Below are positions 1 through 50,946 of a stretch of DNA of 64,000 bases, piece after piece (the stretch's first letter is position 1; each line of letters starts with the position of its first letter). Source of the stretch: Scyliorhinus canicula (taxonomy: Eukaryota); the NCBI RefSeq assembly GCF_902713615.1, contig NC_052158.1:43239159-43303158 (forward strand), given 5' to 3'. The notes beneath the pieces were generated by a model. The model had not been told where the DNA came from. It was given only the letters and a program-made list of their open reading frames with translations, and did no database searches. Made by a program: the position numbers and the translations under genes.

Positions 1-100
1 GATGGGACCGGGATGCAGGGGTGGGGGACATGCGTGGCTGGGGCGCGCGGTGACAACCGGGGCCACCATGTACCTGGTTAGGTATGGGCCATGATAACAT

Positions 101-1783: not shown

Positions 1784-1832
1784 CTTGTGTTTCTCGGAAA
1801 CATGCGACTGAACAGGCTTGCCGAGGGACTTC

Positions 1833-2551: not shown

Positions 2552-2944
2552 TTTGTTCTTTTTTGGGAGAATTGCACCTGAGAATTTTTTCCGCTGAATT
2601 GCATCCATTAATTCTTCTCTCTCCAACGCTGCTGCCAAGCCTGCTAAGTTTTTCTTTCAGATTTTTAGCATTGGCAGTATTTTCCTTTTATTACGAACTT
2701 AAACTTCTCAGTTATGACATATGACTTCTTACATATGAACCTATTAACTTCTGAGAGATAAAACCATTTTTCCACTTACTGCCTCTGCCTCATGGTTTTC
2801 ACTTCCATGCAGCTGGTTTGAAACCCAACAGCTATTGAACTCTGACCTTAGTGAAAATTTTAAAACTTACCAAAGTCGGGCTCTTAATGAGCCCATAATG
2901 ATATGAATTAGCTCCAAAATGGAATGTTCAGGCCTTGTTTGTTG

Positions 2945-21737: not shown

Positions 21738-23016
21738 AAAAGGCAGAGAAAGTGGGAAATATTTATACTGTGGAGTGAGAATGAAAGATGAGTCATAGCC
21801 ATAGAAACCCAGGGAAATGGGGTGCTAATGGTTACAGAAACCAAGGGAAAGAGTGCTAATGGCAGTCCCCTGAGAGAGAACAAAAGATGTGAAAGGTCAA
21901 ACAGCTGAGAAACTAACATCAGAGGGTAAACTGTGACAGATGTAGATGTGGGGAGAGGGGTAGGGGAAGCAAAGGGGACAAAAGGTAAGGAAAGGTGGAT
22001 AAGATGGGGGGGGTTAAATATATATTAAGAAAGACAAGAAGGAAAGAAATGGTAAAAGATAGTTAAAACGAAATGGGATGAAAACAAATGGGTCGAGTTG
22101 GGGGAGAGCTAATAATCTGAATTTGTTGAATTCGATGTTCAGGCTGGAAGGCGTTCAGGCGTGTTTAACCGGAAGATGAGATATTGTTCCTCCAGTTTTC
22201 ATTGAGCTTCACTGGAACATTGCAGCAGGCTATGGACAGACATGTGGGCATGGGAGCAGGGTCTTGTGTTAAAATGGCAAGCAACGGAAAGGTCAGGGTC
22301 CTGAATGCGCACAGACAGAAGGTGCTCAGCAAAGCGATCACCCAGTCTGCGTTTGGTCTCTCCGATATAGAGGAGACCACATTGGGAGCAGCGAATGCAG
22401 TATACCAAATTGGAAGAGATGCAAGTGAAATGCTGCTTAACCTCGAATGAGTGTTTTGGGCCTGGGATATTAAGCATGGAAAAGGTAAAGGGGCAGGTGT
22501 TACACATTCTTCGATTGGATGGGAAGGTGCCATGGGTGATGGGAGAGGCGTTGAGTTATGATGGAGAAGTGGACTAGATTGTCTCAGAGGGAATGGTCTC
22601 TGTGGAATGCTGACAGAGGAAGTGAAGGATGTGTTTAATGGTGGCATCACGCTGGAGTTGGCGAAAATGGCGGAGGATGATGCTTTGCATGCGAAGGCTG
22701 GTGGGGTGAAATGTGAGAACGAGGGGGACTCTATCGTTGTTCTGGGAGGGAGGGGGCGAGGGTAGTGGCGCGGGAGATGGACCGCACACTGTTGAGGGCC
22801 ATGTCCACAACTGTAGGTGGGAACTGACGGTTGAGGAAGAAGGAACACATTTTCAAAGCTAATTTTTGGAAAGTGGCATCATCGGCACAAATGTGAAGGA
22901 GCTGAGAGAAAGGATTCATCAGCTTCAGATGATTAGCTCTACCCCAACTCGACCTATTTGTTTTCACACTATTTCATTTTAACTGTCTTTTACCATTTCT
23001 TACTTTCTTGTCTTTA

Positions 23017-23342
23017 CATAGAACAGTACAGCACAGAACAGGCCCTTCGGCCCTCGATGTTGTGCCAAGCAATGATCACCCCACTTAAACCCACGTAACC
23101 CATATACCCGTAACCCAACAATCCCCCCATTAACCTTACACTACGGGCAATTTAGCATGGCCAATCCACCTAACCCGCACATCTTTGGACTGTGGGAGGA
23201 AACCGGAGCACCCGGAGGAAACCCACGCACACACGGGGAGGACGTGCAGACTCCACACAGACAGTGACCCAGCCGGGAATCGAACCTGGGACCCTGGAGC
23301 TGTGAAGCATTGATGCTAACCACCATGCTACCGTGAGGCCCC
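23017..23342 (-). mobile_element. tRNA-derived V-type SINE inside the PLE inverted arm
   Basis: Same family as 2945-3289. Confidence 0.92.
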
Positions 23343-24735: not shown

Positions 24736-25086
24736 GGGCAGCAGGGTAGCATGGTGGTTAGCATAAATGCTTCACAGCTCCAGGGTCCCAGGTTCGATTC
24801 CCGGCTGGGTCACTGTCTGTGTGGAGTCTGCACGTCCTCCCCCTGTGTGCGTGGGTTTCCTCCGGGTGCTCCGGTTTCCTCCCACAGTCCAAAGATATGC
24901 GGGTTAGGTGGATTGGCCATGCTAAATTGCCCATAGTGTCCTAATAAAAAAGTAAGGTTAAGGGGGGGGGGGTTGTTGGGTTACGGGTATAGGGTGGATA
25001 TGTGGGTTTGAGTAGGGTGATCATGGCTCGGCACAACATTGAGGGCCGAAGGGCCTGTTCTGTGCTGTACTGTTCTATGTTCTATG
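24736..25086 (+). mobile_element. tRNA-derived V-type SINE (HE1-like)
   Basis: Near-identical to 2945-3289. Confidence 0.92.
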
Positions 25087-26049: not shown

Positions 26050-29000
26050 TAAGGGACAATTGGGGCTCATTCTGGGGTAGGTGGGACCTCTACAAACGGG
26101 ATGGTCTATACCTGGACCAGAGGGGTACTAATATCCTCGGGGGGAGGTTTGCTAATGCTCTTCAGGAGGGTTAAAACTAGTTCAGCAGGGGATTGGGAAC
26201 CTGAATTGTAGCTCCAGTACACAAGAAGCTGACAGTAGTGAGGTCATGAGTAAGGTTTCAAAGTTGCAGGAGTGTACCGGCAGGAAGGAAGGTGGTCTAA
26301 AGTGCGTCTACTTCAATGCCAGGAGCATCCGGAATAAGGTGGGTGAGCTTGCGGCATGGGTTAGTACCTGGGACTTCGATGTTGTGGCCATTTCGGAGAC
26401 ATGGATAGAGCAGGGCGAGGAATGGTTGTTGCAGGTGCCGGGGTTTAGATGTTTCAGTAAGTTCAGGGAAGGTGGTAAAAGAGGGGGAGGGGTGGCATTG
26501 TTAGTCAAGGACAGTATTACAGTGGCTGAGAGGACATTTGAGGAGGACTCGAATATTGAGGTAGTATGGGCTGAGTTAAGAAACAGGAAAGGAGAGGTCA
26601 CCCTGTTAGGGCTTTTCTATAGGCCTCCAAAAAGTTCCAGAGATGTAGAGGAAAGGATTGCAAAGATGATTCTGGATAGGAGCGAAAATAACAGGGTAGT
26701 TGTTATAGAACATAGAACATAGAACAGTACAGCACAGAACAGGCCCTTCGGCCCTCGATGTTGTGCCGAGCAATGATCACCCTACTCAAACCCCAAGTAT
26801 CCACCCTATACCCGTAACCCAACAACCCCCCCCCCCTTAACCTTACCCTTTTTAGGACTCTACGGGCAATTTAGCATGGCCAATCCACCTAACCCGCACA
26901 TCTTTGGACTGTGGGAGGAAACCGGAGCACCCGGAGGAAACCCACGCACACACGGGGAGGACGTGCAGACTCCGCACAGACAGTGACCCAGCCGGGAACC
27001 GAACCTGGGACCCTGGAGCTGTGAAGCATTTATGCTAACCACTATGCTACCGTGCTGCCCTTGGGGGACTTTAACTTTCCAAATATTGACTGGAAACACT
27101 ATAGTTCGAGTACTTTAGATGGATCCGTTTTTGTCCAATGTGTGCAGGAGGGTTTCCTGATGTAGTATGTAGATAGGCCAACAAGAGGCGAGGCCATTTT
27201 GGATTTGGTACTGGGTAATGAACCAGGACAGGTGTTAGATTTGGAGGTAGGTGAGCATTTTGGTGATAGTGACCACAATTCGATTACGTTTACTTTAGCG
27301 ATGGAAAGGGATAGATATAAACCGCAGGGCAAGAGTTATTGCTGGGGGAAAGGCAATTATGATGCGATGAGGCAAGACTTAGGATGCATCGCCTGGAGAG
27401 GAAAACTGCAGGGAACACAATGGAAATGTGGAGCATGTTCAAGGAACAGCTACTGCGTGTCCTTGATAAGTATGTACCTGTTAGGCAGGGAGGAAGTGGT
27501 CGAGTGAGGGAACCATGGGTTACTAAAGCAGTTGAATCACTTGTCAAGAGGAAGAAGGAGGCTTATGTGAAGATGAGACGTGATGGTTCAGTTGGGTCGC
27601 TTGAGAGTTACAAGTTAGCTAGGAAGGCTCTAAAGAGAGAGCTAAGAAGAGCCAAGCGAGGACATGAGAAGTCTTTGGCAGGTAGAATCAAGGATAACCC
27701 TAAAGCTTTCTATAGGTATGTCAGGAATAAAAGAATGACTAAGGTAAGAGTAGGGCCAGTCAAGGACAGTAGTGGGAAGTTGTGCGTAGAGTCCGAGGAG
27801 ATAGGAGAGGTGCTAAATGAGTATTTTTCGTCAGTATTCACACAGGAAAAAGACAAAGTTGTCGAGGAGAAAACTGAGATAGAGGCTACTAGACTAGAAG
27901 GGCTTGAGGTTCATAAGGAGGAGGTGTTAGCGATTCTGGAAAGTGTGAAAATAGATAAGTCCCCTGGGCCGTATGGGATTTATCCTAGGATTCTCTGGGA
28001 AGCTAGGGAGGAGATTGCTGAGCCTTTGGCTTTGATCTTTAAGTCAGCTTTGTCTACAGGAATAGTGCCAGAGGACTGGAGGATAGCAAATGTTGTCCCC
28101 TTGTACAAGAAGGGGAGTAGAGATAACCACGGTAACTATAGGCCAGTGAGCCTTACTTCTGTTGTGGGAAAAGTCTTAGAAAGGTTTATAAGAGATAGGA
28201 TGTATAATCATCTGGAAAGGAATAATTTGATTAGAGATAGTCAACATGGTTTTGTGAAGGGTAGGTCGTGCCTCACAAACCTCATTGAGTTCTTCGAGAA
28301 GGTGACCAAACAGGTGGATGAGGGTAAAGCAGTTGATGTGGTGTATATGGATTTCAGTAAAGCGTTTGATAAGGTTCCCCACGGTAGGCTATTGCAGAAA
28401 ATACGGAGGAATGGGATTGAGGATGATTTAGCAGTTTGTATCAGAAATTGGCTAGCTGATAGAAGACAAAGAGTGGTGGTTGATGGGAAATGCTCTGACT
28501 GGTGTCCAGTTACTAGTGGTGTGCCACAAGGATCTGTTTTGGGGCCGTTGCTGTTTGTCATTTTTATAAATGACCTGGAGGAGGGCGTAGAAGGATGGGT
28601 GAGTAAACTTGCGGATGACACTAAAGTCGGTGGAGTTGTGGACAGTGCAGAAGGATGTTACAAGTTACAGAGGGACATAGATAAGCTGCAGAGCTGGGTT
28701 GACAGGTGGCAAATGGAGTTTAATGCAGGAAAGTGTGTGGTGATTCATTTTGGAAGAAATAACAGAAAGGCAGAGTACTGGGCTAATGGTAAGATTCTTG
28801 GTAGTGTGGACGAGCAGAGAGATCTCGGTGTCCATGTCCATTGATCCCTGAAAGTTACCACCCAGATTGAGAGGGCTGGTAAGAAGGAGTACGGTGTGTT
28901 AGCTTTTATTGGTAGAGGAATTGAGTTTTGGAGCCATGAGTTCATATTGCATTTGTACAAAACTCTAGTGCGGCCGCATTTGGAGTATTGCGTGCAGTTC

Positions 29001-29493
29001 TGGTCGCCACATTATAGGAAGGATGTGGAAGCATTGGAAAGGGTACAGAGGAGATTTACAAGGATGTTGCCTGGTATGGAGGGAAGATCATATGAGGAAA
29101 GACTGAAGGACTTGAGGCTGTTTTCATTAGAGAGAAGAAGGCTAAGAGGTGACTTAATTGAGGCACACAAGATGATCAGAGGATTAGATAGGGTGGACAT
29201 TGAGAGCCTTTTTCCTCGGATGGTGATGTCCAGCACGAGGGGACATAGCTTTAAATTGAGGGGAGATAGGAAAGATGTCAGAGGTAGGTTCTTTCCTCAG
29301 AGAGTAGTAAGGGCGTGGAATGCCCTGCCTGCAACAGTAGTGGACTCGCCAACACTAAACACATTCAAATGGTCATTGGATAGGCATATGGACGATAAGG
29401 GAATAGTGTAGAGGGACTTTAGAGGGGTTTTACAGGACGGCGCAACATTGAGGGCCGAAGGGCCTGTACTGCGCTGTAATGTTCTATGTTCTA
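26050..29493 (+). mobile_element. CR1 LINE (5'-truncated; ORF1 esterase tail plus disabled ORF2) inserted in gag
   Basis: NWGSFWGRWDLYKRDGL ORF1 fragment, APE and RT motifs with stops/frameshifts, tail GAGGGCCGAAGGGCCTG...GTTCTA; short TTCTAA duplication at the junctions. Confidence 0.95.
26705..27060 (-). mobile_element. tRNA-derived V-type SINE inside the CR1 APE domain
   Basis: Same family as 2945-3289; splits NRVVV|MGDFNF. Confidence 0.92.
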
Positions 29494-36443: not shown

Positions 36444-39323
36444 ACAACATTCAGGAATGGAGTTGCCTGGGGAACTGGAGTTGTGGGATGACAACACTTT
36501 TGGACCATTACAGTCTGCATTCCTTAGTGGTTAAAAATAGATGTCTCCAAGGCATTAAGACTAGTGTTTCCTGATTGGGATCAAGGGGTAACAACATATA
36601 CGGCATTAGTACTCGATACGCTCAAATCGATAGAGATTCTAAAATCCAGGTTTTTCAAACAGAGACGCAACCTAAAGGGAAAACAGTTTAAACCGGTTAA
36701 AATGCCGTGTATAATTCAAATGCTTCTCAAGAATCAAAAATTAAAAAAGGGAAATGTTATTTTTGTGGGAAAGAAGGAAACTGGGCTAGGTCATGCAAAG
36801 CTAGATTATAAGAATGGCAAGAACAATATGTGCCTACAAACCCGGCTCCTGCTACCAACTCCAAACACCTACATATCATCCACAATTTCCACCACCCCGC
36901 TCCGTGGAGGATTGGGCTGAGTGGGACGCGTTAAAAAAATTATCACCACAACATAGAGCTGCACTACTGGAAATGTCAAAAAACTAGAAACGCCCACCCT
37001 CAGCCCCTCCATCCCTGCCTCTATTCACGCCTTGCTTGAAAATAGAAGAGATGGATTAATGTATTAATGAGGGCGGACGGTATGGAAGTGGACTGCCTCT
37101 TCAATACAGGAGCAGAATTATCATGTTTTCTGTCGGAATTTGAAAGGATATTTCCTTTGGATTACAAACAGACTGTGACTCATGGAATAGAGGGGGATCC
37201 AGTGACTATTAAAGGAACTAAATCTATGTCAATAGAATTTGGTCCTCATGAATTAATTCCCCCAGTCTGGATAGGCGAAGTGGATCAGGCCAATCTGGGT
37301 TTGGATATTATATCCCAACAGAATTCTTCCCTCAGCTTTGAAAATGGAAAAATAACATGGGCAGTTAGAACATTCAGGAAAGATCAGCTTTACGAATACC
37401 AGTTCTGGGCCAAAGATAGGAACGATTGTGGATTATTACATAGGGAACCAGCATCATTCACTGGCTCTGCTCCACCGTGCATGAAACAATACCCTATCGA
37501 CCCATCCTCAATTGAAGGGCTTTTGTCCAGAATAAAACAGTTAAAAGAAAGAGGGGTATTGATCAAAATACACATTGCATCAAACAGTCCAATTGGCCTG
37601 TGAAAAAGGCAAATGGCGCATGGCATTTGACTGTTGATTACCGAAAAGCAAATCATTGTACTGATAAAAAAACTCCTTTGGCACCCGACCTCACGACGAT
37701 TTTCAAAACTCTTACGCCAGAACATGAATGGTTCTCGGTTATTGATTTGGCTAATAACTTCTGGTCAGAACCAATAGCACAGGAGGTGCAACCTTCATTT
37801 GCATTTACTATTCAACAGCAACAGTACACATGGACAAGATTACCATAAGGTTTTCACAACAGTCCTACTGTATTCCATATGGCATTGCAAAATCATTTGA
37901 GGGAATTACCTGAGGTGCCCTCTACCATTATCCAGTATGTAGATGACATTCTGTTAGTCACTATTAAGGAAGAAGGTCACAAAAAGGATTTGCATATGTT
38001 GTTAAACCATCTCAGTAAAAGGAGTCATAGAGCCAACATGGGCAAAGCACAAATTGCTCAGAATGGAGTAATCTATTTAGGTCAGAAAATTTCAAAAGGC
38101 AAAAGAGAATTGACCCAAGATAGAACAGGAGCAATTCAAACTGCAAAAACCTGGCAATATTGAAGAGCTCAGATCATTTTTTGGGTTATGTAACTTCAAT
38201 AGAAATTAGATTGACTCATATATCCATTAGGCACAACCTCTCTTTGATATATTAAAGGGAAGCTGAAAGTCAAAAGAGGAAATTGCTCTTACAACAGAAC
38301 AGGAAAACAACTTTGAGGATTTAAAGCAGGCCTTGTGTTCAGTACCAGCCTTAGGCACACCGAATAGTGGAAAACCATTCATCCTATTTGTTCATGAAAA
38401 AGAAGCATATATGACAGCAATTTTAACACAGGATCATGAGGATCAGCAGAGACCAATTGGGTACTATTCAGGAAGACTGGATCCAGTAGCCCTTGGATGC
38501 GGGTGTTGTCTGAGAGCTGTAGAAGCCACATGTAAAGCTGTAACAGCAACTGCAGGCATTATTCTGGACCAAAAATTAATCATTAAATGCCATCACATGG
38601 ATTATGCATTACTTTCAATAAATAGAGTCACACTAGTCACCTCAGCCAGGTGGGCAAAAGGGACAACAATCTTGCAAGCGGCCAACCTTTATTTTCAAAA
38701 ACCAAGCCCAGTAAACCCATCATCCTTACTCCCGCTCCCTGGGGAACAAAAGGGGGGTGAAGAAGAGCATGACTGTGTTGAGACAATGAAGGAGATGGAG
38801 GGGGCATGTTTAGTAGAGGAAGAACCATTACAGAACCCAGATCTAATGTTATTTACAGATGGGTCCTCTTTCGTGGAAAAGAATATTTGAAAGGCAGGAT
38901 GGGCAGACACAAGTCTGTATCCTGTTAAGGCAGAAGGAAAATTACCCTCAGGAATCTCAGCCCAACAAGCTGAGCTTAAAGCCCTAGCTGAAGCCTGTCA
39001 GGTGGCAAAAGATCAAACAGCTAACATTTATACAGGCTCGAGACATGGCTTTGGAATAGCTCATGGTTTTGGTCAAATATGGAAGAAAAGAGGGTTCCTC
39101 ACTGCTGTAGAGACACCTATTCGAAATGGGGATGAGGTACGCAATCTATTAGAAGCTTTAAAGTTGCCAAAAGAAGTAGCTATTTTAAAATGTATGGCCC
39201 ATACCAAGAAGCCACCTCAGAAGCACAGGGAAATGCCCTTGCAGATCAAACAGCAAAAGAAGCTGCTCCATTATGCAATTCTTCAGAAAAGTTCAAACAA
39301 ATTTGTCAACTAGGAGTACACAG

Positions 39324-39547
39324 GGGTCAGCACGGTGGCACAGTGGTTAGCATTGCTGCCTACGGCACTGAGGACCCGGGTTCGAATCCCGGCCCTGGGT
39401 CACTGTCCGCGTGGAGTTTGCACATTCTCCCCGTGTCTGCGTGGGTTTCACCCCCACAACCCAAAGATGTGCAGGGTAGGTAGATTGGCCACTCTAAATT
39501 GCCCCTTAATTGGAAAAACATAATTGGGTACGCTAAATTTAAAAAAA
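39324..39547 (+). mobile_element. Short A-tailed SINE with 16-bp TSD
   Basis: AACTAGGAGTACACAG at 39308-39323 and 39548-39563. Confidence 0.92.
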
Positions 39548-41991
39548 AACTAGGAGTACACAGAACATAGAACATAGAACATTACAGCGCAGTACAGGCC
39601 CTTCGGCCCTCGATGTTGCGCCATCCTGTGAAACCCCTCTAAAGTCCCTCTACACTGTTCCCTTATCGTCCATATGCCTATCCGATGAACATTTGAATGT
39701 GTTTAGTGTTGACGAGTCCACTACTGTTGCAGGCAGGGCGTTCCACGCCCTTACTACTCTCTGAGTAAAGAACCTACCTCTGACATCTTTCCTATATCTA
39801 TCTCCCCTCAATTTAAAGATATGTCCCCTCGTGCTGGACATCACCATCTGAGGAAAAAGGCTCTCAATGTCCACCCTATCTAATCCTCTGATCATCTTGT
39901 ATGCCTCAATTAAGTCACCTCTTATCCTTCTTCTCTCTAATGAAAACAGCCTCAAGTCCTTCAGCCTTTCCTCATATGATATTCCCTCCATACCAGGCAA
40001 CATCCTTGTAAATCTCCTCTGTACCCTTTCCAATGCTTCCACATCCTTCCTATAATGTGGCGACCAGAACTGCACGCAATACTCCAAATGCGGCCGCACT
40101 ACAGTTTTGTACAAATGCAATATGAACTCATGGCTCCAAAACTCAATTCCTCTACCAATAAAAGCTAACACACCGTACGCCTTCTTAACAGCCCTCTCAA
40201 TCTGGGTGGTAACTTTCAGGGATCAATGGACATGGACACCGAGATCTCTCTGCTCGTCCACACTACCAAGAATCTTATCATTAGCCCAGTACTCTGTCTT
40301 CCTATTATTCCTTCCAAAATGAATCACCGCACACCTTATCTGCATTAAATTCCATTTGCCACCTGTCAGCCCAGCTCTGCAGCTTATCTATATCCCTCTG
40401 TAATTTGTAACATCCTTCTGCACTGTCCACAACTCCACCGACTTTAGTGTCATCTGCAAATTTACTCACCCATCCTTCTATGCCCTCCTCCAGGTCATTT
40501 ATAAAAATGAAAAACAGCAGCGGTCCCAAAACAGATCCTTGTGGTACACCACTAGTAACTGGACACCAGTCAGAACATTTACCATCAACCACCACCCTTT
40601 GTCTTTTATCAGCTAGCCAATTTCTGATCCAAACTGCTAAATCACCCTGAATCCCATGCCTCTGTATTTTCTGCAATAGCCTACCGTGGGGAACCTTATC
40701 AAACGCTTTACTGAAATCCATATACACCACATCAACTGCTTTACCCTCATCCAACTGTTTGGTCACCTTCTCGAAGAACTCAATGAGGTTTGTGAGGCAC
40801 GACCTACCCTTCACAAAACCATGTTGACTATCTCTAATCAAATTATTCCTTTCCAGATGATTATACATCCTATCTCTTATAAACCTTTCTAAGACTTTTC
40901 CCACAACAGAAGTAAGGCTCATTGGTCTATAGTTACCAGGGTTATCTCTACTCCCCTTCTTGAACAAGGGGACAACATTTGCTATCCTCCAGTCCTCTCA
41001 CACTATTCCTGTAGACAAAGATGACTTAAAGATCAAAGCCAAAGGCTCAGCAATCTCATCCCTAGCTTCCCAGAGAATCCTAGGATAAATCCCATCCGGC
41101 CCTGGGGACTTATCTATTTTCACACTTTCCAGAATCGCTAACACCTCCTCCTTATGAACCTCAAGCCCTTCTAGTCTAGTAGCCTCTATCTCAGTATTCT
41201 CCTCAACAACTTTGTCTTTTTCCTGTGTGAATACTGACGAAAAATACTCATTTAGCACCTCTCCTATCTCCTCAGACTCCACGCACTATTTCCCACCACT
41301 GTCCTTGACTGGTCCTACTCTTACCTTAGTCATTCTTTTATTCCTGACATACCTATAGAAAGTTTTAGGGTTATCCTTGATCCTACCTGCCAAAGACTTC
41401 TCATGTCCTCGCTTGGCTCTTCTTAGCTCTCTCTTTAGAGCCTTCCTAGATAACTTGTAACTCTCAAGCGACCCAACTGAACCATCACGTCTCATCTTCA
41501 CATAAGCCTCCTTCTTCCTCTTGACAAGTGATTCAACTGCTTTGGTAACCCATGGTTCCCTCACTCAACGACTTCCTCCCTGCCTAACAGGTACATACTT
41601 ATCAAGTACGCGCAGTAGCTGTTCCTTGAACATGCTCCACATTTCCATTATGTCCATCCCCTGCAGTTTTCCTCTCCAGCCGATGCATCCTAAGTCTTGC
41701 CTCATCGCATCATAATTGCCTTTCCCCCAGATATAACTCTTGCCCTGCAGTGTATACCTATCCCTTTCCATCATTAAAGTAAATGTAATCGAATTGTGGT
41801 CACTATCACCAAAGTGCTCACCTACCTCCAAATCTAACACCTGTCCTGGTTCATTACCCAGTACCAATTCCAAAACGGCCTCGCCTCTTGTTGGCCTATC
41901 TACATACTGTGGAGATGCCGGCGTTGGACTGGGGTGAGCACAGTAAGAAGTCTTACAACACCAGGTTAAAGTCCAACAGGTTTGTTTCAAA

Positions 41992-42026
41992 CACGAGCTT
42001 TCGGAGCACGGCTCCTTCTTCAGGTG
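41992..42026 (-). ncRNA. Minimal type I hammerhead ribozyme (downstream pseudo-LTR)
   Basis: Minus strand: CAC CTGAAGA A GGAGC cgt GCTCC GAAA GCTC GTG. Confidence 0.85.
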
Positions 42027-42170
42027 AATGGAAAGGCTTGTTCCAGAAATGTTTATATAGACACAGTCAGAGATGCCCGGAATGCGAGCACCTGCAGGCA
42101 ATCAAATCATCAAAGATGCAGAGAGAGAGGTAACTCCAGGTTAAAGAGGTGTGAATTGTCCCAAGCCAGT

Positions 42171-44888
42171 TCAGTCGGTAGGCCTCTGCAAGTCCAGGCT
42201 TGTTGGTGGGGGCCGAATGTAATGCGACATGAATCCCAGATCCCGGTTGAGTCCGCATTCATGCGTGCGGAACTTAGCTATAAGTTTTTGCTCAGCAATT
42301 TTGCGTTGTCGCGTCTCCTGAAGGCCTCCTTGTAGAATGCTGACCCGGAGATCAGAGGCTGAATGTCCTTGACTGCTGAAGTGTTCCCCAACTGGAAGGG
42401 AACAGTCCTGCCTGTTGATAGTCGCACGATGCCCGTTTATTCGTTGTCGCAGTGTCTGCATGGTCTCGCCAATGTACCACGCTTCGGGACATCCTTTCCT
42501 GCAGCGTATGAGGTAGACTACATTGGTCGAGTCGCACGAGTATGCGCCGCGTACCTGGTGGGTGGTGTTTCCACGTGTAATGGTGGTGTCCATGTCGATG
42601 ATCTGGCATGTCTTGCAGAGATTACCCTGGCAGGGTTTTGTGGTGTTGTGGTTGCTGTTCTGAAGGCTGGGTAATTTGCTGCAAACAATGGTTTGTTTGA
42701 GGTTGCGCGGTTGTTTGAAGGCCAGTAGTGGGGGTGTGGGGATGACCTTGGCAAGATGTCCATCCTCGCTGATGATGTGTTGGAGGCTGCGAAGAAGATG
42801 TCGTAGTTTCTCCGCCCCAGGAAAGTACTGGACGACGAAGGGTACTCTGTCAGTGGTGTCCCGTGTTTGTCTTCTGAGGAGGTCGGTGCGGTTTTTTGCT
42901 GTGGCGCGGTGGAACTGTCGATCAATGAGTCGAGCGCCATATCCCGTTCGTACGAGGGCATCTTTCAGCATCTGTAGGTGTCTGTTGCGCTCCTCCTTGT
43001 CTGAGCAGATCCTGTGTATACGGAGGGCTTGTCCATAGGGGATGGCTTCTTTAATGTGTTTCGGGTGAAAGCTGGAGAAGTGGAGCATCGTGAGATTATC
43101 TGTGGGCTTGCGGTAAAGCGAGGTGCTGAGGTGACCGTCCTTGATGGAGACGAGTGTGTCCAAGAATGGAACTGAATTTGGAGAATAGTCCATGGTGAGT
43201 TTGATGGTGGGATGGAACTTATTGATGTCATCGTGTAGTCGTTTCAGTGATGTCTCGCCGTGGGTCCAAAGGAAAAAAATGTCATCGATGTATCTGGTGT
43301 ATAGCATCGGTTGAAAGTCCTGTGTGGTGAGGAAGTCCTGTTCAAACTTGTGCATGAAGATGTTGGCATATTGAGGTGCAAATTTGGTCCCCATGGCTGT
43401 TCCGTGCGTCTGGATGAAGAATTTGTTGTCGAAGGTGAAGACGTTGTGGTCTAGAATGAAACGGATGAGTTGCAGAATTGCGTCTGGAGATTGGCAGTTG
43501 TCGGTGTTGAGGACTGAGGCTGTTGCAGCAATGCCGTCGTCATGGGGGATGCTGGTGTAGAGTGCCGAGACATCCATTGTGACGAGGAATGTTCCTGGTT
43601 CAACTGGTCCATGGGTGCTGAGTTTCTGTAGGAAGTCCGTCGTGTCGCGACAGAAGCTGGGTGTACCTTGTACGATGGGTTTCAAGATGCCCTCGATGTG
43701 GCCAGAGAGGTTCTCACACAGGGTCCCATTGCCTGAAACGATAGGACGGCCTGGTGTGTTGGCCTTGTGTATTTTCGGGAGGCAGTAGAGATCTCCAATG
43801 CGGGGATTACGTGGGATGAGAGCACGTAGGGTGTTCTGAAGGTCTGGATCTAAGGTCTTGATCAGTCTGCTGAGTTGGCGGATGTGTTCCTTGGTTGGAT
43901 CTGCGGGTAACTGCCTGTAGTGTTCCTGGTTGTCGAGTTGTCGGTATACTTCTTTGCAGTAGTCTGTTCTGTTCAGTATGACGGTGGCCCCTCCTTTGTC
44001 TGCTGGTTTGATGACGATGTTGCGGTTGGTCTTGAGAGTGCGGATGGCGTTGCGTTGTGCTTGGGTGACGTTTGAGGCTGCCTTGTGATTGCGAGTGATG
44101 AATCTGGCATTGACACGACTTCTGACGGCTTGAGCATACATGTCGAGTCTAGGGCAGCGGCCTTCCGGAGGGGTCCAATTTGACTCTTTCCTTTTCGGTT
44201 GCTGCACTGCAGATCTCGCGGTCTGCTGTTCCGGTTCATTGGTCGTGTCCCTGGGTTCGCTGTCGGCCTCTTGGGGTCTGTGGAAGAATTCCCGGAGCCT
44301 CATTCGCCTGATGAATTCCTCCGTATCTGCCGCAAGACTGATGGGGTCCATTTTGGTGGTGGTGCAGAAATTGAGCCCTCTGCTGAGGACTTCGATTTCG
44401 TCTGGTTGAAGGGTGTAGTCTGACAAGTTGACAATGGATTTCCCTGTATTGTTTTCGACTGTTGTACCGGGAGAAGCTTGATTGCTGCTGGTGGTGATGC
44501 CAAGTTTCTCAAGCTTCCTGTTCTTGGTGTGCATGTAGGTGGCATAGTATTGCTGTCTCATCTGTTTGGCGGTGTTCCGCAGCTGGTCTGCTGTGTCCTG
44601 AGCGCAAGTTGAGAATATGGCCTCTCTCTTGGTTTCCAGGTTGCGTCGACTGCTGTAGAGTTGGTGTACGAGGTGTTTGAGGAGTGTGACAGAGGTGCGG
44701 TGGCAGAGTCTTTCAGCGTAGTCTGTGTTGTAAGTCGACTTGAGTGGGTTTTTGATCTGTAGTCCTTTCGGGATCTTGTCTGCTTTTTTGCATCTTTGTA
44801 GAAACTGAATGTCAGTGTCTATATGCGCGATCTTCCTGGAGATCCTCTCCACTTTGAGCCGGCAGTTTGCGGTGTCAATGGTAGCCAT
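42171..44888 (-). CDS. Intact PLE polyprotein (905 aa from ATG; RT plus GIY-YIG endonuclease)
   Basis: Uninterrupted ORF; RT motifs DVSALYTSIP, GTAMG, RYIDD; Cys cluster PCQGNLCKTC before VVYLIRC...WYIGET. Confidence 0.95.
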   Translation of the reverse strand: MATIDTANCRLKVERISRKIAHIDTDIQFLQRCKKADKIPKGLQIKNPLKSTYNTDYAERLCHRTSVTLLKHLVHQLYSSRRNLETKREAIFSTCAQDTADQLRNTAKQMRQQYYATYMHTKNRKLEKLGITTSSNQASPGTTVENNTGKSIVNLSDYTLQPDEIEVLSRGLNFCTTTKMDPISLAADTEEFIRRMRLREFFHRPQEADSEPRDTTNEPEQQTARSAVQQPKRKESNWTPPEGRCPRLDMYAQAVRSRVNARFITRNHKAASNVTQAQRNAIRTLKTNRNIVIKPADKGGATVILNRTDYCKEVYRQLDNQEHYRQLPADPTKEHIRQLSRLIKTLDPDLQNTLRALIPRNPRIGDLYCLPKIHKANTPGRPIVSGNGTLCENLSGHIEGILKPIVQGTPSFCRDTTDFLQKLSTHGPVEPGTFLVTMDVSALYTSIPHDDGIAATASVLNTDNCQSPDAILQLIRFILDHNVFTFDNKFFIQTHGTAMGTKFAPQYANIFMHKFEQDFLTTQDFQPMLYTRYIDDIFFLWTHGETSLKRLHDDINKFHPTIKLTMDYSPNSVPFLDTLVSIKDGHLSTSLYRKPTDNLTMLHFSSFHPKHIKEAIPYGQALRIHRICSDKEERNRHLQMLKDALVRTGYGARLIDRQFHRATAKNRTDLLRRQTRDTTDRVPFVVQYFPGAEKLRHLLRSLQHIISEDGHLAKVIPTPPLLAFKQPRNLKQTIVCSKLPSLQNSNHNTTKPCQGNLCKTCQIIDMDTTITRGNTTHQVRGAYSCDSTNVVYLIRCRKGCPEAWYIGETMQTLRQRINGHRATINRQDCSLPVGEHFSSQGHSASDLRVSILQGGLQETRQRKIAEQKLIAKFRTHECGLNRDLGFMSHYIRPPPTSLDLQRPTD

Positions 44889-44974
44889 GATGTGGAGATG
44901 CCGGCGTTGGACTGGGGTGAGCACAGTAAGAAGTCTTACAACACCAGGTTAAAGTCCAACAGGTTTGTTTCAAA

Positions 44975-45009
44975 CACGAGCTTTCGGAGCACGGCTCCTT
45001 CTTCAGGTG
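44975..45009 (-). ncRNA. Minimal type I hammerhead ribozyme (upstream pseudo-LTR)
   Basis: Identical to 41992-42026, 2983 nt away in the same orientation. Confidence 0.85.
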
Positions 45010-45106
45010 AATGGAAAGGCTTGTTCCAGAAATGTTTATATAGACCCTTCAACCAGACGAAATCGAAGTCCTCAGCAGAGGGTTCAATTTCTGCACCACC
45101 ACCAAA

Positions 45107-47287
45107 ATGGACCCCATCAGTCTCGCGGCAGATACGGAGGAATTCATCAGGCGAATGAGGCTCCGGGAATTCTTCCACAGACCCCAAGAGGCCGACAGCG
45201 AACCCAGGGACACGACCAATGAACCGGAACAGCAGACCGCGAGATCTGCAGTGCAGCAACCGAAAAGGAAAGAGTCAAATTGGACCCCTCCGGAAGGCCG
45301 CTGCCCTAGACTCGACATGTATGCTCAAGCCGTCAGAAGTCGTGTCAATGCCAGATTCATCACTCGCAATCACAAGGCAGCCTCAAACGTCACCCAAGCA
45401 CAACGCAACGCCATCCGCACTCTCAAGACCAACCGCAACATCGTCATCAAACCAGCAGACAAAGGAGGGGCCACCGTCATACTGAACAGAACAGACTACT
45501 GCAAAGAAGTATACCGACAACTCGACAACCAGGAACACTACAGGCAGTTACCCGCAGATCCAACCAAGGAACACATCCGCCAACTCAGCAGACTGATCAA
45601 GACCTTAGATCCAGACCTTCAGAACACCCTACGTGCTCTCATCCCACGTAATCCCCGCATTGGAGATCTCTACTGCCTCCCGAAAATACACAAGGCCAAC
45701 ACACCAGGCCGTCCTATCGTTTCAGGCAATGGGACCCTGTGTGAGAACCTCTCTGGCCACATCGAGGGCATCTTGAAACCCATCGTACAAGGTACACCCA
45801 GCTTCTGTCGCGACACGACGGACTTCCTACAGAAACTCAGCACCCATGGACCAGTTGAACCAGGAACATTCCTCGTCACAATGGATGTCTCGGCACTCTA
45901 CACCAGCATCCCCCATGACGACGGCATTGCTGCAACAGCCTCAGTCCTCAACACCGACAACTGCCAATCTCCAGACGCAATTCTGCAACTCATCCGTTTC
46001 ATTCTAGACCACAACGTCTTCACCTTCGACAACAAATTCTTCATCCAGACGCACGGAACAGCCATGGGGACCAAATTTGCACCTCAATATGCCAACATCT
46101 TCATGCACAAGTTTGAACAGGACTTCCTCACCACACAGGACTTTCAACCGATGCTATACACCAGATACATCGATGACATTTTTTTCCTTTGGACCCACGG
46201 CGAGACATCACTGAAACGACTACACGATGACATCAATAAGTTCCATCCCACCATCAAACTCACCATGGACTATTCTCCAAATTCAGTTCCATTCTTGGAC
46301 ACACTCGTCTCCATCAAGGACGGTCACCTCAGCACCTCGCTTTACCGCAAGCCCACAGATAATCTCACGATGCTCCACTTCTCCAGCTTTCACCCGAAAC
46401 ACATTAAAGAAGCCATCCCCTATGGACAAGCCCTCCGTATACACAGGATCTGCTCAGACAAGGAGGAGCGCAACAGACACCTACAGATGCTGAAAGATGC
46501 CCTCGTACGAACGGGATATGGCGCTGGACTCATTGATCGACAGTTCCACCGCGCCGCAGCAAAAAACCGCACCGACCTCCTCAGAAGACAAACACGGGAC
46601 ACCACTGACAGAGTACCCTTCGTCGTCCAGTACTTTCCTGGGGCGGAGAAACTACGACATCTTCTTCGCAGCCTCCAACACATCATCAGCGAGGATGGAC
46701 ATCTTGCCAAGGTCATCCCCACACCCCCACTACTGGCCTTCAAACAACCGCGCAACCTCAAACAAACCATTGTTTGCAGCAAATTACCCAGCCTTCAGAA
46801 CAGCAACCACAACACCACAAAACCCTGCCAGGGTAATCTCTGCAAGACATGCCAGATCATCGACATGGACACCACCATTACACGTGGAAACACCACCCAC
46901 CAGGTACGCGGCGCATACTCGTGCGACTCGACCAATGTAGTCTACCTCATACGCTGCAGGAAAGGATGTCCCGAAGCGTGGTACATTGGCGAGACCATGC
47001 AGACACTGCGACAACGAATAAACGGGCATCGTGCGACTATCAACAGGCAGGACTGTTCCCTTCCAGTTGGGGAACACTTCAGCAGTCAAGGACATTCAGC
47101 CTCTGATCTCCGGGTCAGCATTCTACAAGGAGGCCTTCAGGAGACGCGACAACGCAAAATTGCTGAGCAAAAACTTATAGCTAAGTTCCGCACGCATGAA
47201 TGCGGACTCAACCGGGATCTGGGATTCATGTCGCATTACATTCGGCCCCCACCAACAAGCCTGGACTTGCAGAGGCCTACCGACTGA
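45107..47287 (+). CDS. N-terminally truncated copy of the PLE ORF (726 aa; RT and GIY-YIG intact)
   Basis: Same protein as the minus ORF from MDPISL onward, with two visible substitutions (R>G, T>A). Confidence 0.85.
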   Translation: MDPISLAADTEEFIRRMRLREFFHRPQEADSEPRDTTNEPEQQTARSAVQQPKRKESNWTPPEGRCPRLDMYAQAVRSRVNARFITRNHKAASNVTQAQRNAIRTLKTNRNIVIKPADKGGATVILNRTDYCKEVYRQLDNQEHYRQLPADPTKEHIRQLSRLIKTLDPDLQNTLRALIPRNPRIGDLYCLPKIHKANTPGRPIVSGNGTLCENLSGHIEGILKPIVQGTPSFCRDTTDFLQKLSTHGPVEPGTFLVTMDVSALYTSIPHDDGIAATASVLNTDNCQSPDAILQLIRFILDHNVFTFDNKFFIQTHGTAMGTKFAPQYANIFMHKFEQDFLTTQDFQPMLYTRYIDDIFFLWTHGETSLKRLHDDINKFHPTIKLTMDYSPNSVPFLDTLVSIKDGHLSTSLYRKPTDNLTMLHFSSFHPKHIKEAIPYGQALRIHRICSDKEERNRHLQMLKDALVRTGYGAGLIDRQFHRAAAKNRTDLLRRQTRDTTDRVPFVVQYFPGAEKLRHLLRSLQHIISEDGHLAKVIPTPPLLAFKQPRNLKQTIVCSKLPSLQNSNHNTTKPCQGNLCKTCQIIDMDTTITRGNTTHQVRGAYSCDSTNVVYLIRCRKGCPEAWYIGETMQTLRQRINGHRATINRQDCSLPVGEHFSSQGHSASDLRVSILQGGLQETRQRKIAEQKLIAKFRTHECGLNRDLGFMSHYIRPPPTSLDLQRPTD

Positions 47288-47431
47288 ACTGGCTTGGGAC
47301 AATTCACACCTCTTTAACCTGGAGTTACCTCTCTCTCTGCATCTTTGATGATTTGATTGCCTGCAGGTGCTCGCATTCCGGGCATCTCTGACTGTGTCTA
47401 TATAAACATTTCTGGAACAAGCCTTTCCATT

Positions 47432-47466
47432 CACCTGAAGAAGGAGCCGTGCTCCGAAAGCTCGTG
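47432..47466 (+). ncRNA. Minimal type I hammerhead ribozyme (inverted arm)
   Basis: CAC-CTGAAGA-A-GGAGC-cgt-GCTCC-GAAA-GC-TC-GTG; palindromic AGCU stem III; CUC triplet, predicted cut after 47463. Confidence 0.85.
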
Positions 47467-49164
47467 TTTGAAACAAACCTGTTGGACTTTAACCTGGTGT
47501 TGTAAGACTTCTTACTATCTACATACTGCATCAGGAAACCCTCCTGCACACATTGGACAAAGACGGACCCATCTAAAGTACTCAAACTATAGTGTTTCCA
47601 GTCAATATTTGGAAAGTTAAAGTCCCCCATAACCCTGTTATTTTCGCTCCCATCCAGAATCATCTTTCAAATCCTTTCCTCTACATCTCTGGAACTTTTC
47701 GGAGGCCTATAGAAAAGCCCTAATAGGGTGACCTCTCTTTTCCTGTTTCTTAACTCAGCCCATACTACCTCAGTATTCGAGTCCTCATCAAATGTCCTCT
47801 CAGCCGCCGTAATACTGTCCTTGACTAACAATGCCACCCCTCCCCCTCTCTTACCACCTTCCCTGAGCTTACTGAAATATCTAAACCCCGGCACCTGCAA
47901 CAACCATTCCTCGCCCTGCTCTATCCATGTCTCCAAAATGGCCACAACATCGAAGTCCCAGGTACTAACCCATGCCGCAAGCTCACCCACCTTATTCCTG
48001 ATGCTCCTGGCATTGAAGTAGACGCACTTTAAACCACCTTCTTTCTTGCCGGTACATTCCTGCAACAGCCTGATACAACGTTTGTGCAAAATGCAAAAAG
48101 ATAGTCCACAGGAAGAAAAATGGACCTGGATGGAAGCAGGTGTTAATTTCTGTAATGATGATATTTGGAGACAAACTGAGACTAATAAAGTAGTAACACC
48201 ACAGTCACTAATGCCTTATTTAGCTCAGCAAATCCATTCATGGGGGCACCAAGCTCCTCAACAGATGATGGCTCGATTCCAAAGAAGTTGGTGGGATTGA
48301 GGATTTAAGAAACATGCTCAGATAGTAGCAGACCATTGTGTCACTTGTCAAAAAAACAATTCAGGACCTATAACATCCATGCCTCAGTTAAAAAACCCTG
48401 TCCCATCGGGACCATTTCAACACATACAACTTGATTACATCACTCTTCCATCATGTCAAGGATACTCTGAAGTTCTAGTAATAGTAGACAAATTTTCCAG
48501 ATGCGTAGAAGCCATTCTAGCCAAGAAAGCTACAGCTGGCCACACAGCTGAAGTCTTATGTAAACTATATCCCTCGCTGGGCAGTACCAGTCAGCATAGA
48601 CTCAGATAAAGAAACTAATTTCACCGAAGCTGTTTGTAAAGAGGTTTGTAGATTAAACATCCAGTGGGAGCTACATTGTCCTTACCACCCACAATCATCA
48701 GGACAATTGGAACGCATGAATCGAACCCTGAAGGAACGATTATCGAAGTATCACCAAGAGGGAAGACCAGGGCCCCAAACTTTGCCATTGGTCCTGTGGA
48801 GTATCAGAGCAACACCAAACATGACAACAGGCCTGTGTCCATTTGAAGTAATTACTGGCAGACCCATGTCCTTACCAGGAACTATTGACCTGCGAAAATG
48901 CGGATTGTCATTTAATGAATGATGCACTACTCAAATACTGCCAAGATCTAACAAATGCCGTTAGTTCTGCTTCCTTACAGGTCGTCCCAAAGGCGGGCAT
49001 GACATTTTGCCAGGAATTGAAGTGTACATAAAGAAACTGCAGAAAGAACCATTGGGGTGCAAGTGGGAAGGACCCTACCAGGTGTTACTCAAAACTCCAG
49101 CAGCCGTAAAGCTGCAGGGAAAGAAGTCCTGGATCCAGGCATCACACATTAAAAGAGCTCATTA

Positions 49165-50946
49165 TGATTAAAACATTTTTAAAATGTTTTCTGCCATCTT
49201 TACTTTTGGATGTCTTCTAATCTGATGAATTATGGCCAATTCATCCAGGCTCACAAGGAGTTAAATTACAATACTTTTCTTCATATGTCTAGGGTATATG
49301 CTGAAAATTTAAAAATCTCCAAATGTTGGCTATATATTGCAATTTCTACCCACTCAGGAGAAGGTATCCCTTTCTTATCTATTCCTTTTAACACTTCAGA
49401 AACAGTAGAGTGGTATATTTTTCAGAGCGCCACCCGTCTTCACAGATCCGTGAAGGAGCAAATACATATTGGGAAACTATGGCCGGGATTCTCCCCTACC
49501 CGGCGGGGCGGGGGTCCTGGCGGGATGGAGTGGCGTGAACCACTCCGGGTCGGACCGCCCCAAAGGTGCAGAGGTCTCCGCACCTTTAGGGGCCAAGTCC
49601 TCACCTTGAGGGGCCAAGTCCCCGCCGGAGTGGTTGGTGGTACAGTTGGGGCCGAAAGGACTTCGCCGGCCAGTGTAAGTCCGCGCATTCACCGGAGCGT
49701 CAGCAGCTGCTGACGTCATCCCCGTGCATGTGTTGGGGAGGGGGTCACTTCCGCCTCCGCCATGGTGAAGACCATGGCGAAGGCGGAAGGAAAAGAGTGC
49801 TCCCACGGCACAGGCCCGCCCGCCGATCGGTGGGTCCCGATTGCGGGCCAGGCCACCGTGGGGCACCCCCGAGGGCCAGATCGCCCCCCCCCAACCCAGC
49901 GGGGGGTCGGAGAATCCCGCCCCATGTATCAAGTTAATTTAAAGATAATAATCCAATTATGGAAATCTGCAGGTTATTTACTAAATACATTTTTAGGATG
50001 GCATCAATACAACTATGACAGAAACTAAAATCCTCCCCATATCAACCTCCCATCTACTATTAATCAGGAAGGATCAATATGTTTAATAAGTTATCATCCT
50101 AAAGGGATGAAGATGGGATATAACTGTACTCATTATTTTAATGTAAGCAGAACTTACAAATGTACTCCAACGCTGTTAGAGAGAGTTACTGGTTCCTCGT
50201 TATTAACAGGTCTATAGAATCTCACTGGTAATAATACATTTTCAGATCGATGGCACTTAGAGGAAATTTCCCATTATACTTCTTATAATGGGACTTATTT
50301 TATCTGTAACAACAAAGCATATCCTTGGCTTCCAAAACTTTGGTCAGGGTCTTGTCATTTAGGATACGTAATGCCTGCCATCCGTCATCTTCCTTCTTTA
50401 TCAAGTCTACCAGTTCAAAGAAATACGTGTGCCGTCACTGCACAAGATAGATTCCTTGCCCAACTTGTTCCTTTTTATTGGGATGCAAAAGTAGCCAAAG
50501 AATTGAATAAAATAACAACCATCATAGAAAAAGTAGTTAATGATACCTCTACTGCCCTAGTTAAAGTTTCTGCCGAAATGCTAACTATTCGTACTGTAAC
50601 TTTACAAAACAGAATGGCTCTTGATTATATTCTGGCGGAAAAAGATGGAACATGTGCCTTAATTGGACCAGAATGTTGTACTTATATTCCAGATGATTCC
50701 AAAGAAATCACAGATTTGGCAAACCACATTCAAAAAGAAGTGGAAAAATTAAGACAACCCGAGTCTAACACTCTTTGGAGTTGGGCTACGGATTGGTTGG
50801 GATCCTTGGGAGCCTCAGTGGTACAAGGTCTGGCGATATTTTGTGTACTCATTTTTGCTGTGTATCTTGTATTTTTGACAACCAAATGTATCTGTAAGAA
50901 ATTGACAAGAAACCCTGAAGTAGTAATACCTTTGCAGCGCATGTGA
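49165..50946 (+). pseudogene. env: ERV env (gamma-type), SU disabled, TM frame 50371-50946 still open
   Basis: SU CWLY (degenerate CXXC); immunosuppressive domain LQNRMALDYILAE; CX6CC (CALIGPECC); membrane anchor LAIFCVLIFAVYLVFL; MITE and stops in SU. Confidence 0.9.
49481..49922. mobile_element. Harbinger-type MITE inserted in env
   Basis: TIRs GGCCGGGATTCTCC / GGAGAATCCCGCCC. Confidence 0.85.

What the first reader, a model, noticed from the sequence alone, without database searches (positions are those of the whole stretch)
41896..47528. Young 5.6-kb palindromic Penelope insertion: intact RT-endonuclease, 2.47-kb inverted arms, 14-bp TSD
Arms 41942-44414 and 45044-47516 are reverse complements with only about four substitutions that I could see, around a 629-bp spacer. 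Both 3' ends face the target, each with 2-nt microhomology to the TSD (CA left, CT right), and the internal junction has AC microhomology (45044-45045). This points to two reverse transcriptions primed from both target strands, each starting in the 3' pseudo-LTR, then joined head to head. The minus unit encodes an uninterrupted 905-aa protein and is potentially still active. Read-through transcription would give a very long dsRNA hairpin near an MHC gene.
Basis: partly seen in the sequence, partly recalled or inferred. Interest (0 to 1): 0.75.

Follow-up and report, generated by a model that had tools for sequence, protein, structure and literature searches.

The report
Head-to-head Penelope-like retrotransposon insertion in shark
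This is a real, young insertion of a shark Penelope-like retrotransposon, a full-length copy joined head to head with a front-truncated mirror copy inside one 14-bp target duplication; that layout is already the textbook form for this element class, so it is a clean example rather than a new phenomenon.

Summary
The arms 41942-44414 and 45044-47516 are reverse complements with exactly four mismatches. The spacer is 629 bp. The 14-bp duplication CTATCTACATACTG flanks the whole insert. The minus unit carries an uninterrupted 905-aa RT plus GIY-YIG ORF.

A 96%-identical LINE copy in the same window holds the 14-mer once, with both flanks contiguous. It serves as a paralogous empty site and shows one genuine insertion.

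The "spacer" is the extra 5' part of a full-length 2983-nt unit bounded by 153-nt pseudo-LTRs. Each pseudo-LTR carries a minimal hammerhead motif. The two 3' ends lie 53 and 85 nt past the predicted ribozyme cut, so they differ by a 32-nt "tail".

A full-length copy, pLTRs, an inverted 5'-truncated copy, a tail at one end and a TSD together form the published typical PLE insertion. Cleavage and priming on both target strands, with two RT start sites, has been shown in vitro for an anole PLE.

The endonuclease linker motif marks a Neptune-type PLE, not Penelope/Poseidon proper. I found no MHC gene in the window. This scan has already followed up similar palindromes elsewhere in this genome.

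The parts
41896..41909 (.). Left copy of the 14-bp target-site duplication CTATCTACATACTG.
   Evidence: (D13). The single-copy counterpart in the paralogous LINE is shown.
41910..41941 (-). The 32-nt 'tail'. It is the extra 3' extension of the minus unit beyond the point where the plus copy ends. The same 32 nt occur internally at 44893-44924.
   Evidence: (D1). A 30-40-nt tail at one end is described for PLEs in PMC8557442 and PMC11167929.
41910..42062 (-). 3' pseudo-LTR of the minus unit (153 nt). It is identical to 44893-45045.
   Evidence: (D1).
41995..42023 (-). Minimal hammerhead motif in the 3' pLTR, with predicted cleavage after 41995. The 3' end of the unit lies 85 nt further on.
   Evidence: Descriptor scan; fold. 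Rfam covariance models were negative.
42171..44888 (-). Uninterrupted 905-aa ORF. It carries the DKG motif, RT motifs including YIDD, a CX4CxxC linker, and a GIY-YIG endonuclease with CCHH and the R/H/E/N residues.
   Evidence: translation; RVT_1, E 7e-10; GIY-YIG, E 4e-4, just under the curated cutoff; homologues; alignment.
44893..45045 (-). 5' pseudo-LTR of the minus unit, formed by partial tandem. It ends 4 nt before the ATG. The unit period is 2983 nt.
   Evidence: (D1, spacing 2983).
44978..45006 (-). Minimal hammerhead motif in the 5' pLTR, with predicted cleavage after 44978.
45044..45045 (.). Head-to-head junction. AC is shared by the 5' end of the minus unit and the 5'-truncated start of the plus copy.
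45044..47516 (+). Inverted 5'-truncated copy (2473 nt). Its frame is open for 747 codons up to the stop codon that ends at 47287. It lacks the first 158 codons and has no tail.
   Evidence: (I1).
47435..47463 (+). Minimal hammerhead motif in the plus copy, with predicted cleavage after 47463. The 3' end of the copy lies 53 nt further on.
47515..47528 (.). Right copy of the 14-bp target-site duplication.
   Evidence: (D13).
39568..41909 (-). Host LINE fragment, the RT-side part, into which the element inserted.
   Evidence: 96% identity to 29493-27164. The paralogue carries RVT_1.
47515..48066 (-). Host LINE fragment, the part on the endonuclease side.
   Evidence: The paralogue carries Exo_endo_phos.
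27163..27176 (-). Paralogous empty site. The 14-mer is present once in the sister LINE copy, with both flanks contiguous.

Best explanation
This is one retrotransposition event of an endonuclease-containing Penelope-like element of the Neptune type, nested in a LINE fragment of a shark genome.

Inferred sequence of events:
- The element's GIY-YIG endonuclease made nicks staggered by 14 nt.
- Both exposed 3'-OH ends primed reverse transcription of element RNA that was longer than one unit and was not cut at its hammerheads.
- On the left target end, RT started 85 nt past the ribozyme cut site. It copied 3136 nt, which is one full unit plus a 153-nt pseudo-LTR.
- On the right target end, RT started at the alternative site, 53 nt past the cut. 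It copied 2473 nt.
- The two cDNA 3' ends then met on a 2-nt overlap (AC) and templated each other. This gave a head-to-head palindrome with a 629-nt asymmetric centre inside one TSD.

Shown here: the anatomy, the TSD and empty site, the intact ORF with catalytic motifs, the hammerhead motifs, and the 32-nt offset of the two ends.

Inferred: the order and enzymology of the steps.
For: - Geometry. Both 3' ends abut the TSD and both 5' ends meet inside.
- Single event. There is one 14-bp TSD around the composite and none inside it. The empty-site paralogue holds the 14-mer once.
- Template longer than a unit and uncut. The left copy crosses two predicted hammerhead cut sites and the right copy crosses one.
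- The 32-nt offset. It falls in the published 30-40-nt 'tail', which corresponds to two RT start sites in vitro. The same study shows cleavage and extension of both target strands, and use of unprocessed RNA (PMC11167929).
- The layout. A full-length copy with pLTRs, an adjacent inverted 5'-truncated copy and a tail at one end is figured as typical for PLEs (PMC8557442). The same layout with a TSD is described in rotifers (PMC3846280).
- Family identity. RVT_1; a GIY-YIG hit just below the curated cutoff; thousands of PLE-type homologues, with sharks closest at 82-91% identity; conserved DKG, YIDD, CCHH, CX4CxxC and R/H/E/N residues.
- Youth. There are 4 differences in 2473 nt between the arms, and the pLTR copies are identical.
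Against: - The interior of the structure, for example a collapsed extra tandem unit, is therefore unverified.
I could not show that +53 and +85 are the family's recurrent 3' ends.
- The hammerhead is not recognised by Rfam models. My descriptor was written after I had seen the sequence. The three copies are identical, so there is no covariation evidence.
- One locus cannot separate two RNAs from one multimeric RNA, or dual priming from a template jump.
Confidence: 0.8

Rival explanations
1. Twin priming on a single multimeric RNA, as in L1 5' inversions. One target end primes near the RNA 3' end. The other target end primes internally, one unit upstream on the same molecule.
For: The template was longer than one unit. 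On unit coordinates the two copies can be laid on one RNA of about 5.5 kb with a 120-nt overlap, or with a 479-nt gap (my arithmetic). The four arm differences could then be differences between tandem units of the source locus.
Against: Classical twin priming gives consecutive, non-overlapping RNA segments. Here 2.47 kb is present in both arms, which requires a template of at least two units. Both ends fall at pLTR positions that fit specific RT start sites rather than arbitrary internal annealing. This is a sub-variant of the best explanation rather than a true opponent.
Confidence: 0.25
2. Snap-back self-priming. The first cDNA, or an antisense template, folded back on itself and copied itself. 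This was proposed for rotifer Penelope palindromes.
For: PMC3846280 proposes self-priming to explain head-to-head repeats that have palindromes at the junction. The arms here are nearly identical.
Against: There is no palindrome at the junction. Only a 2-nt overlap is present, and the fold-back point would lie 631 nt from the end. A snap-back copy should run to the end of its own template, including the 32-nt tail and the primer. Instead, the right arm stops 32 nt short, exactly at the TSD.
Confidence: 0.07
3. Assembly or read artefact: a fold-back chimera, or a false join of two copies.
For: PLE tandem and inverted structures are known to trouble assemblies (PMC8557442). No reads were available to me.
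Against: Fold-back chimeras are symmetric and perfect. This structure has a 629-nt asymmetric centre, a 32-nt tail on one side only and 4 arm mismatches. The outer flanks are the two halves of one LINE, split at a precise 14-bp duplication, as the empty-site paralogue shows. A false join of two loci would not give that.
Confidence: 0.05
4. Two independent insertions, a later copy landing next to or into an earlier one, or a later DNA-level inverted duplication.
For: PLEs do insert into their own pLTRs (PMC11167929).
Against: There is no second TSD around either unit. The composite as a whole is bounded by the single 14-bp duplication. The right arm ends at a position that fits an RT start site and directly abuts the target.
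Confidence: 0.04

Closest known systems
Typical EN+ Penelope-like element insertion (Evgen'ev & Arkhipova 2005; Arkhipova 2006; Craig et al. 2021, Fig. 2; PMC8557442).
   Same: A full-length ORF between direct pLTRs formed by partial tandem, an inverted 5'-truncated copy abutting the upstream pLTR, a 30-40-nt tail at only one end, a hammerhead motif in the pLTR, and a TSD of variable length.
   Different: The inverted copy here is long (2.47 kb, most of the ORF) rather than mainly a pLTR. The host is a shark.
Pen2a_Av of the rotifer Adineta vaga (PMC3846280).
   Same: An ORF bounded by two direct pLTRs with an adjacent inverted pLTR, a 31-bp tail at one end, and a single TSD (9 bp).
   Different: In the rotifer the inverted part is only a pLTR that overlaps the direct one by 15 bp, and the ORF has a stop codon. 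Here the junction overlap is 2 nt, the TSD is 14 bp and the ORF is intact.
PAc, Poseidon of Anolis carolinensis, studied in vitro (PMC11167929).
   Same: Both target strands are cleaved and extended. RT starts at two internal sites separated by the tail. Template RNA is not cut at the hammerhead. The published distal start lies 85-92 nt past the ribozyme cut (111-118 minus 26); here it lies at 85 nt.
   Different: PAc belongs to Penelope/Poseidon, and its hammerhead and start sites lie inside the ORF start. Here the endonuclease is Neptune-type, and the hammerhead and both start sites lie upstream of the ATG.
L1 twin-priming 5' inversions.
   Same: Both 3'-OH ends of a staggered break prime reverse transcription, and the cDNAs join by microhomology.
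   Different: L1 inversions hold consecutive segments of one RNA. Here the same 2.47 kb is present twice.

Membership tests
Penelope-like elements, canonical C-terminal EN+ type | A single ORF with a PLE-type reverse transcriptase (DKG motif, RT motifs with YIDD). | tested here: met
   RVT_1 at E 7e-10. DKG at residues 298-300 and YIDD are conserved with homologues. 4011 homologues at E<=1e-10 share the same precomputed domain set.
Penelope-like elements, canonical C-terminal EN+ type | A C-terminal GIY-YIG endonuclease with two Cys of the CCHH motif between GIY and YIG, plus catalytic R, H, E and N. | tested here: met
   The sequence VVYLIRCRKGCPEAWYIGET...LRQRINGH...EQKL...GLN is read. Pfam GIY-YIG gives E 4e-4 and 21.1 bits against a cutoff of 22.6, so the profile hit alone is sub-threshold. 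The definition comes from PMC8557442.
Penelope-like elements, canonical C-terminal EN+ type | Pseudo-LTRs formed by partial tandem. | tested here: met
   153-nt identical direct repeats at 41910-42062 and 44893-45045, with a period of 2983.
Penelope-like elements, canonical C-terminal EN+ type | A hammerhead ribozyme motif in the pLTR. | tested here: inconclusive
   A descriptor for the minimal PLE hammerhead hits exactly three times in 64 kb, all in the pLTRs in sense orientation, against 0.01 hits in shuffles. The MFE fold gives helices I and II. However, Rfam models are negative, the descriptor was written post hoc, there is no covariation, and cleavage is untested.
Penelope-like elements, canonical C-terminal EN+ type | An optional 30-40-nt tail at one end, and an inverted 5'-truncated copy at the 5' end. 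| tested here: met
   A 32-nt tail at 41910-41941 on the left only, and an inverted copy at 45044-47516.
Neptune clade of PLEs | [quoted passage not shown] | tested here: met
   PCQGNLCKTC (C-x4-C-xx-C) is conserved in nearly all aligned homologues. The criterion comes from PMC8557442.
Neptune clade of PLEs | Phylogenetic placement of the RT with reference Neptune elements, as opposed to Nematis. | not tested
I favour Neptune only because the host is a vertebrate, which is an inference.
Penelope/Poseidon clade of PLEs | Absence of the CX2-5CxxC linker motif. | tested here: not met
   The linker motif is present, so the element should not be filed as Penelope/Poseidon proper.
L1-type twin-priming inversion | The inverted and direct parts are consecutive, essentially non-overlapping segments of one RNA. 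| tested here: not met
   The same 2473 nt occur in both arms. This is compatible only if the RNA held at least two tandem units.

The most novel reading that the evidence does not exclude
The asymmetry may be systematic. In each dual-primed insertion, one target strand would use the distal RT start site (+85, leaving the tail) and the other the proximal site (+53), reflecting two non-equivalent protomers of an RT-endonuclease dimer. The three amino-acid differences, all derived in the truncated arm, might then mark a second template or a lower-fidelity second cDNA. If a family-wide census confirmed this, natural palindromic copies in this shark would give a strand-resolved in vivo record of the still unsolved later steps of PLE integration.
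Probability: 0.15. Interest if true: 0.45.

Novelty: new member of a known kind. Interest (0 to 1): 0.25.

Why it matters
This is a very clean natural footprint of how Penelope-like elements integrate. It shows both target ends priming, two alternative RT start sites 32 nt apart, templates not cut at the hammerhead, and a microhomology join, all with an empty-site control in the same window. The in vitro picture comes from an anole Poseidon element; this locus extends it to a Neptune-type element in a cartilaginous fish. The intact 905-aa ORF suggests the family was active recently in this shark lineage. It does not open a new question. The architecture and the dual-strand priming idea are published, and this scan has already followed up similar palindromes in the same genome.

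Tried and rejected
- Rfam scans of the element (E<=1) and of the pLTR alone (E<=10) gave no hammerhead family, only chance-level CAESAR and snoR639 hits.
Spanning reads, presence/absence polymorphism, expression and small RNAs could not be examined.
I could not fetch DNA of other shark copies to test the recurrence of the two 3' ends, to look for hammerhead covariation, or to polarise the synonymous difference.
- The MHC claim was not confirmed. Regex scans of six-frame translations for C1-set and alpha-2-like motifs found nothing convincing. Twenty long frames scanned against Pfam gave only LINE RT, APE endonuclease, retroviral RNase H and an env. This search was not exhaustive, since short exons could be missed.
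- I first read two of the four arm differences as CpG deamination in the left arm. I rejected this after alignment to homologues showed the left arm carries the family residues (L172, R653, T663) and the right arm the derived ones.
- I considered scanning all 226 open frames through one alignment call. I dropped this because of the amount of typed text it would need.
- Rejected readings: an L1-style single-unit twin-priming inversion, snap-back synthesis, two independent insertions and an assembly chimera. The reasons are given under rival explanations.
Full report
**Observation**

The repeat finder reports inverted arms 41942-44417 / 45041-47516. It also reports a 160-nt direct repeat (41903-42062 = 44886-45045, spacing 2983) and a 14-nt exact direct repeat at 41896-41909 and 47515-47528.

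I compared 41942-44414 base by base with the reverse complement of 45044-47516 (2473 nt). There are exactly four mismatches, at 42902/46556, 42932/46526, 44334/45124 and 44375/45083. The window holds no N.

**Anatomy**

On the minus strand one unit runs from 45045 down to 41910 (3136 nt).
- Its first and last 153 nt (44893-45045 and 41910-42062) are identical direct repeats. These are pseudo-LTRs produced by a partial tandem of a 2983-nt unit.
- The ORF starts at ATG 44888, 4 nt after the 5' pLTR. It runs uninterrupted for 905 codons to the stop at 42171.

The plus copy (45044-47516) is the same sequence 5'-truncated at codon 159, with its frame open for 747 codons. The 'spacer' is therefore not foreign DNA. 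It is the extra 5' part of the full-length unit.

The two 3' ends are not equivalent. The left one reaches 32 nt further (41910-41941) than the right one.

**The protein**

- Pfam gives RVT_1 for both copies.
- Pfam gives a GIY-YIG hit just below the curated cutoff for the C-terminus (E 4e-4).
- The word search finds 4011 relatives at E<=1e-10. The closest are annotated only as uncharacterised proteins of sharks: Scyliorhinus torazame 91%, Heptranchias perlo 85%, Mustelus asterias 82%. Turtles, ticks, echinoderms and amphioxus follow. The window therefore comes from a shark.
- The alignment shows conserved DKG, RT motifs with YIDD, VVYLI...YIGET with two Cys between them (CCHH type), the R/H/E/N residues, and a conserved PC-x4-C-xx-C linker motif.
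- According to PMC8557442, CCHH is universal to canonical EN+ PLEs. The CX2-5CxxC linker marks Neptune and Nematis and is absent from Penelope/Poseidon. The element is thus a Penelope-like element of the Neptune type. It is not Penelope in the narrow sense. I did not test placement by phylogeny.

**Empty site**

The flanks belong to a LINE fragment (39568-41909 and 47515-48066, minus orientation). It is 96% identical to another copy in the same window (26263-29493), which carries APE endonuclease and RT domains.

In that copy the two flanks are contiguous and the 14-mer occurs once (27163-27176, last base A instead of G). This paralogous empty site shows three things:
- The 14 bp were duplicated on insertion.
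- The whole 5.6-kb composite lies between the two copies.
- Left and right flanks belong together, which a false assembly join of two loci would not give.

**Hammerheads and ends**

Rfam models find no ribozyme. However, PLE hammerheads are known to be minimal variants. They have a large helix II, a bulged base at its 5' end and a short palindromic helix III (PMC4209133).

I wrote a descriptor of that form: CUGANGA, an optional bulge, a helix II of at least 4 bp, GAAA, a palindromic insert of 0-4 nt, then UH.
- It hits exactly three times in the 64 kb on both strands. All three hits are in the pLTR copies in sense orientation, with cuts predicted after 41995(-), 44978(-) and 47463(+).
- Shuffled sequence gives 0.01 hits.
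- The unconstrained MFE fold reproduces helices I and II.

This agrees with another first-reader note on the same stretch (s1-243620).

There are caveats. The descriptor was written after I had seen the sequence. The three copies are identical, so there is no covariation. Cleavage is untested.

The 3' ends lie 85 nt (left) and 53 nt (right) past the predicted cut. Both copies cross cut sites (two and one respectively), so the templates were uncut there.

**Comparison with the literature**

- PMC8557442 describes the typical PLE insertion. [quoted passage not shown] - PMC3846280 describes the same layout with a 31-bp tail and a 9-bp TSD in a rotifer.
- PMC11167929 shows in vitro that an anole PLE protein cleaves and extends both target strands. 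It initiates RT at two internal RNA sites whose spacing corresponds to the tail, and it uses RNA not processed by the hammerhead. Its distal start lies 111-118 nt into the ORF and the cut lies at +26, which is 85-92 nt past the cut. Here the distal start is at 85 nt.

The locus therefore matches the known architecture feature for feature.

**Mechanism (inferred)**

Nicks staggered by 14 nt leave two 3'-OH ends that each carry the TSD sequence.
- Extension of the top-strand end places an antisense copy immediately right of the left TSD.
- Extension of the bottom-strand end places a sense copy immediately left of the right TSD.

This is the orientation observed. The two cDNA 3' ends overlap by AC/GT at 45044-45045 and can template each other.

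The 5' end of the left copy lies at a TATATAAA box (sense strand, 45042-45035), upstream of any start site that box would set. The template must therefore have begun in an upstream unit. That fits the multi-copy transcripts proposed in PMC11167929.

One locus cannot decide between two RNAs and one RNA of at least two units. On unit coordinates the two copies fit one 5.5-kb RNA with a 120-nt overlap or a 479-nt gap.

Snap-back synthesis is disfavoured, because the right arm stops 32 nt short of the left and there is no junction palindrome. Two separate insertions are disfavoured, because there is no second TSD.

**Age and the four differences**

The arms differ at 0.16% and the pLTR copies are identical. 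Three differences change amino acids (L172F, R653G, T663A) and one is synonymous.

At all three non-synonymous sites the full-length unit carries the residue shared with most aligned homologues, including the closest shark relatives where they cover the site, and the truncated arm carries the derived one. With only three sites this is not significant (two-sided 1/4). It is compatible with post-insertion mutation, RT error or a second template.

If all four differences arose after insertion, shark neutral rates of roughly 1e-10 to 1e-9 per site per year would put the age at roughly 1-8 million years at most. Those rates are from my own recollection, not a tool result. The estimate is rough.

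**Context**

The window is dense in nested transposable elements:
- several LINE copies;
- an older PLE endonuclease fragment at 22154-22729;
- retroviral RNase H at 38267-39310 and an env at 50218-50943.

**Limits**

- The interior of the structure rests on the assembly plus internal consistency: an asymmetric centre, a one-sided tail, four mismatches and the empty site.

**Earlier notes of this scan (unchecked AI notes)**

They list many Penelope-type head-to-head insertions in this genome, including 5-kb palindromes with a single TSD that follow-up agents judged real but of a known form. The scan has therefore found this kind of thing before on other DNA of the same genome.

**Verdict**

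- This is a new member of a known kind.
- Interest is low to moderate, as a clean natural footprint.

Noticed in passing
window 26263-29493 (+), 18423-20951 (+), and 39568-41909 with 47515-48066 (-): Three copies of one LINE family carrying APE endonuclease and RT. Two are 96% identical to each other and the third is about 75% identical. The 96% pair provides the empty-site control. The paralogue carries a 364-nt extra segment (26698-27061) that is absent from the host copy.
   Followed up: partly
window 39325-39504, 26864-27060, 23145-23335, 24736-24932: A dispersed repeat of about 190 nt, 72-74% identical between copies, possibly SINE-like. One copy lies inside the extra segment of the paralogous LINE.
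   Followed up: no
window 22154-22729 (-): An older, diverged Penelope-like endonuclease-region fragment, 27% amino-acid identity to the young element over 201 residues. It shows an earlier PLE lineage in the same region.
   Followed up: no
window 38267-39310 (+) and 50218-50943 (+): Frames with retroviral RNase H domains, and a TLV_coat-type envelope frame. These may be parts of an endogenous retrovirus that the LINE and PLE insertions interrupt or lie beside. I observed them only.
   Followed up: no
window 88-213: A segment of about 100 bp flanked by a direct repeat of about 12-13 bp (GCCATGATAACA...). My hammerhead descriptor does not hit it, so any ribozyme there is of another form.
   Followed up: no
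window 300-2700: A G+C-rich stretch with overlapping Pro/Gly-rich open frames on both strands, possibly a CpG island or a low-complexity repeat.
   Followed up: no
window 45035-45042 (-), 42052-42059 (-), 47399-47406 (+): A TATATAAA box at the very 5' edge of the pLTR. In the full-length unit it sits right at the head-to-head junction. Rotifer Penelope pLTRs have been noted to carry a TATA box readable in both directions (PMC3846280).
   Followed up: no
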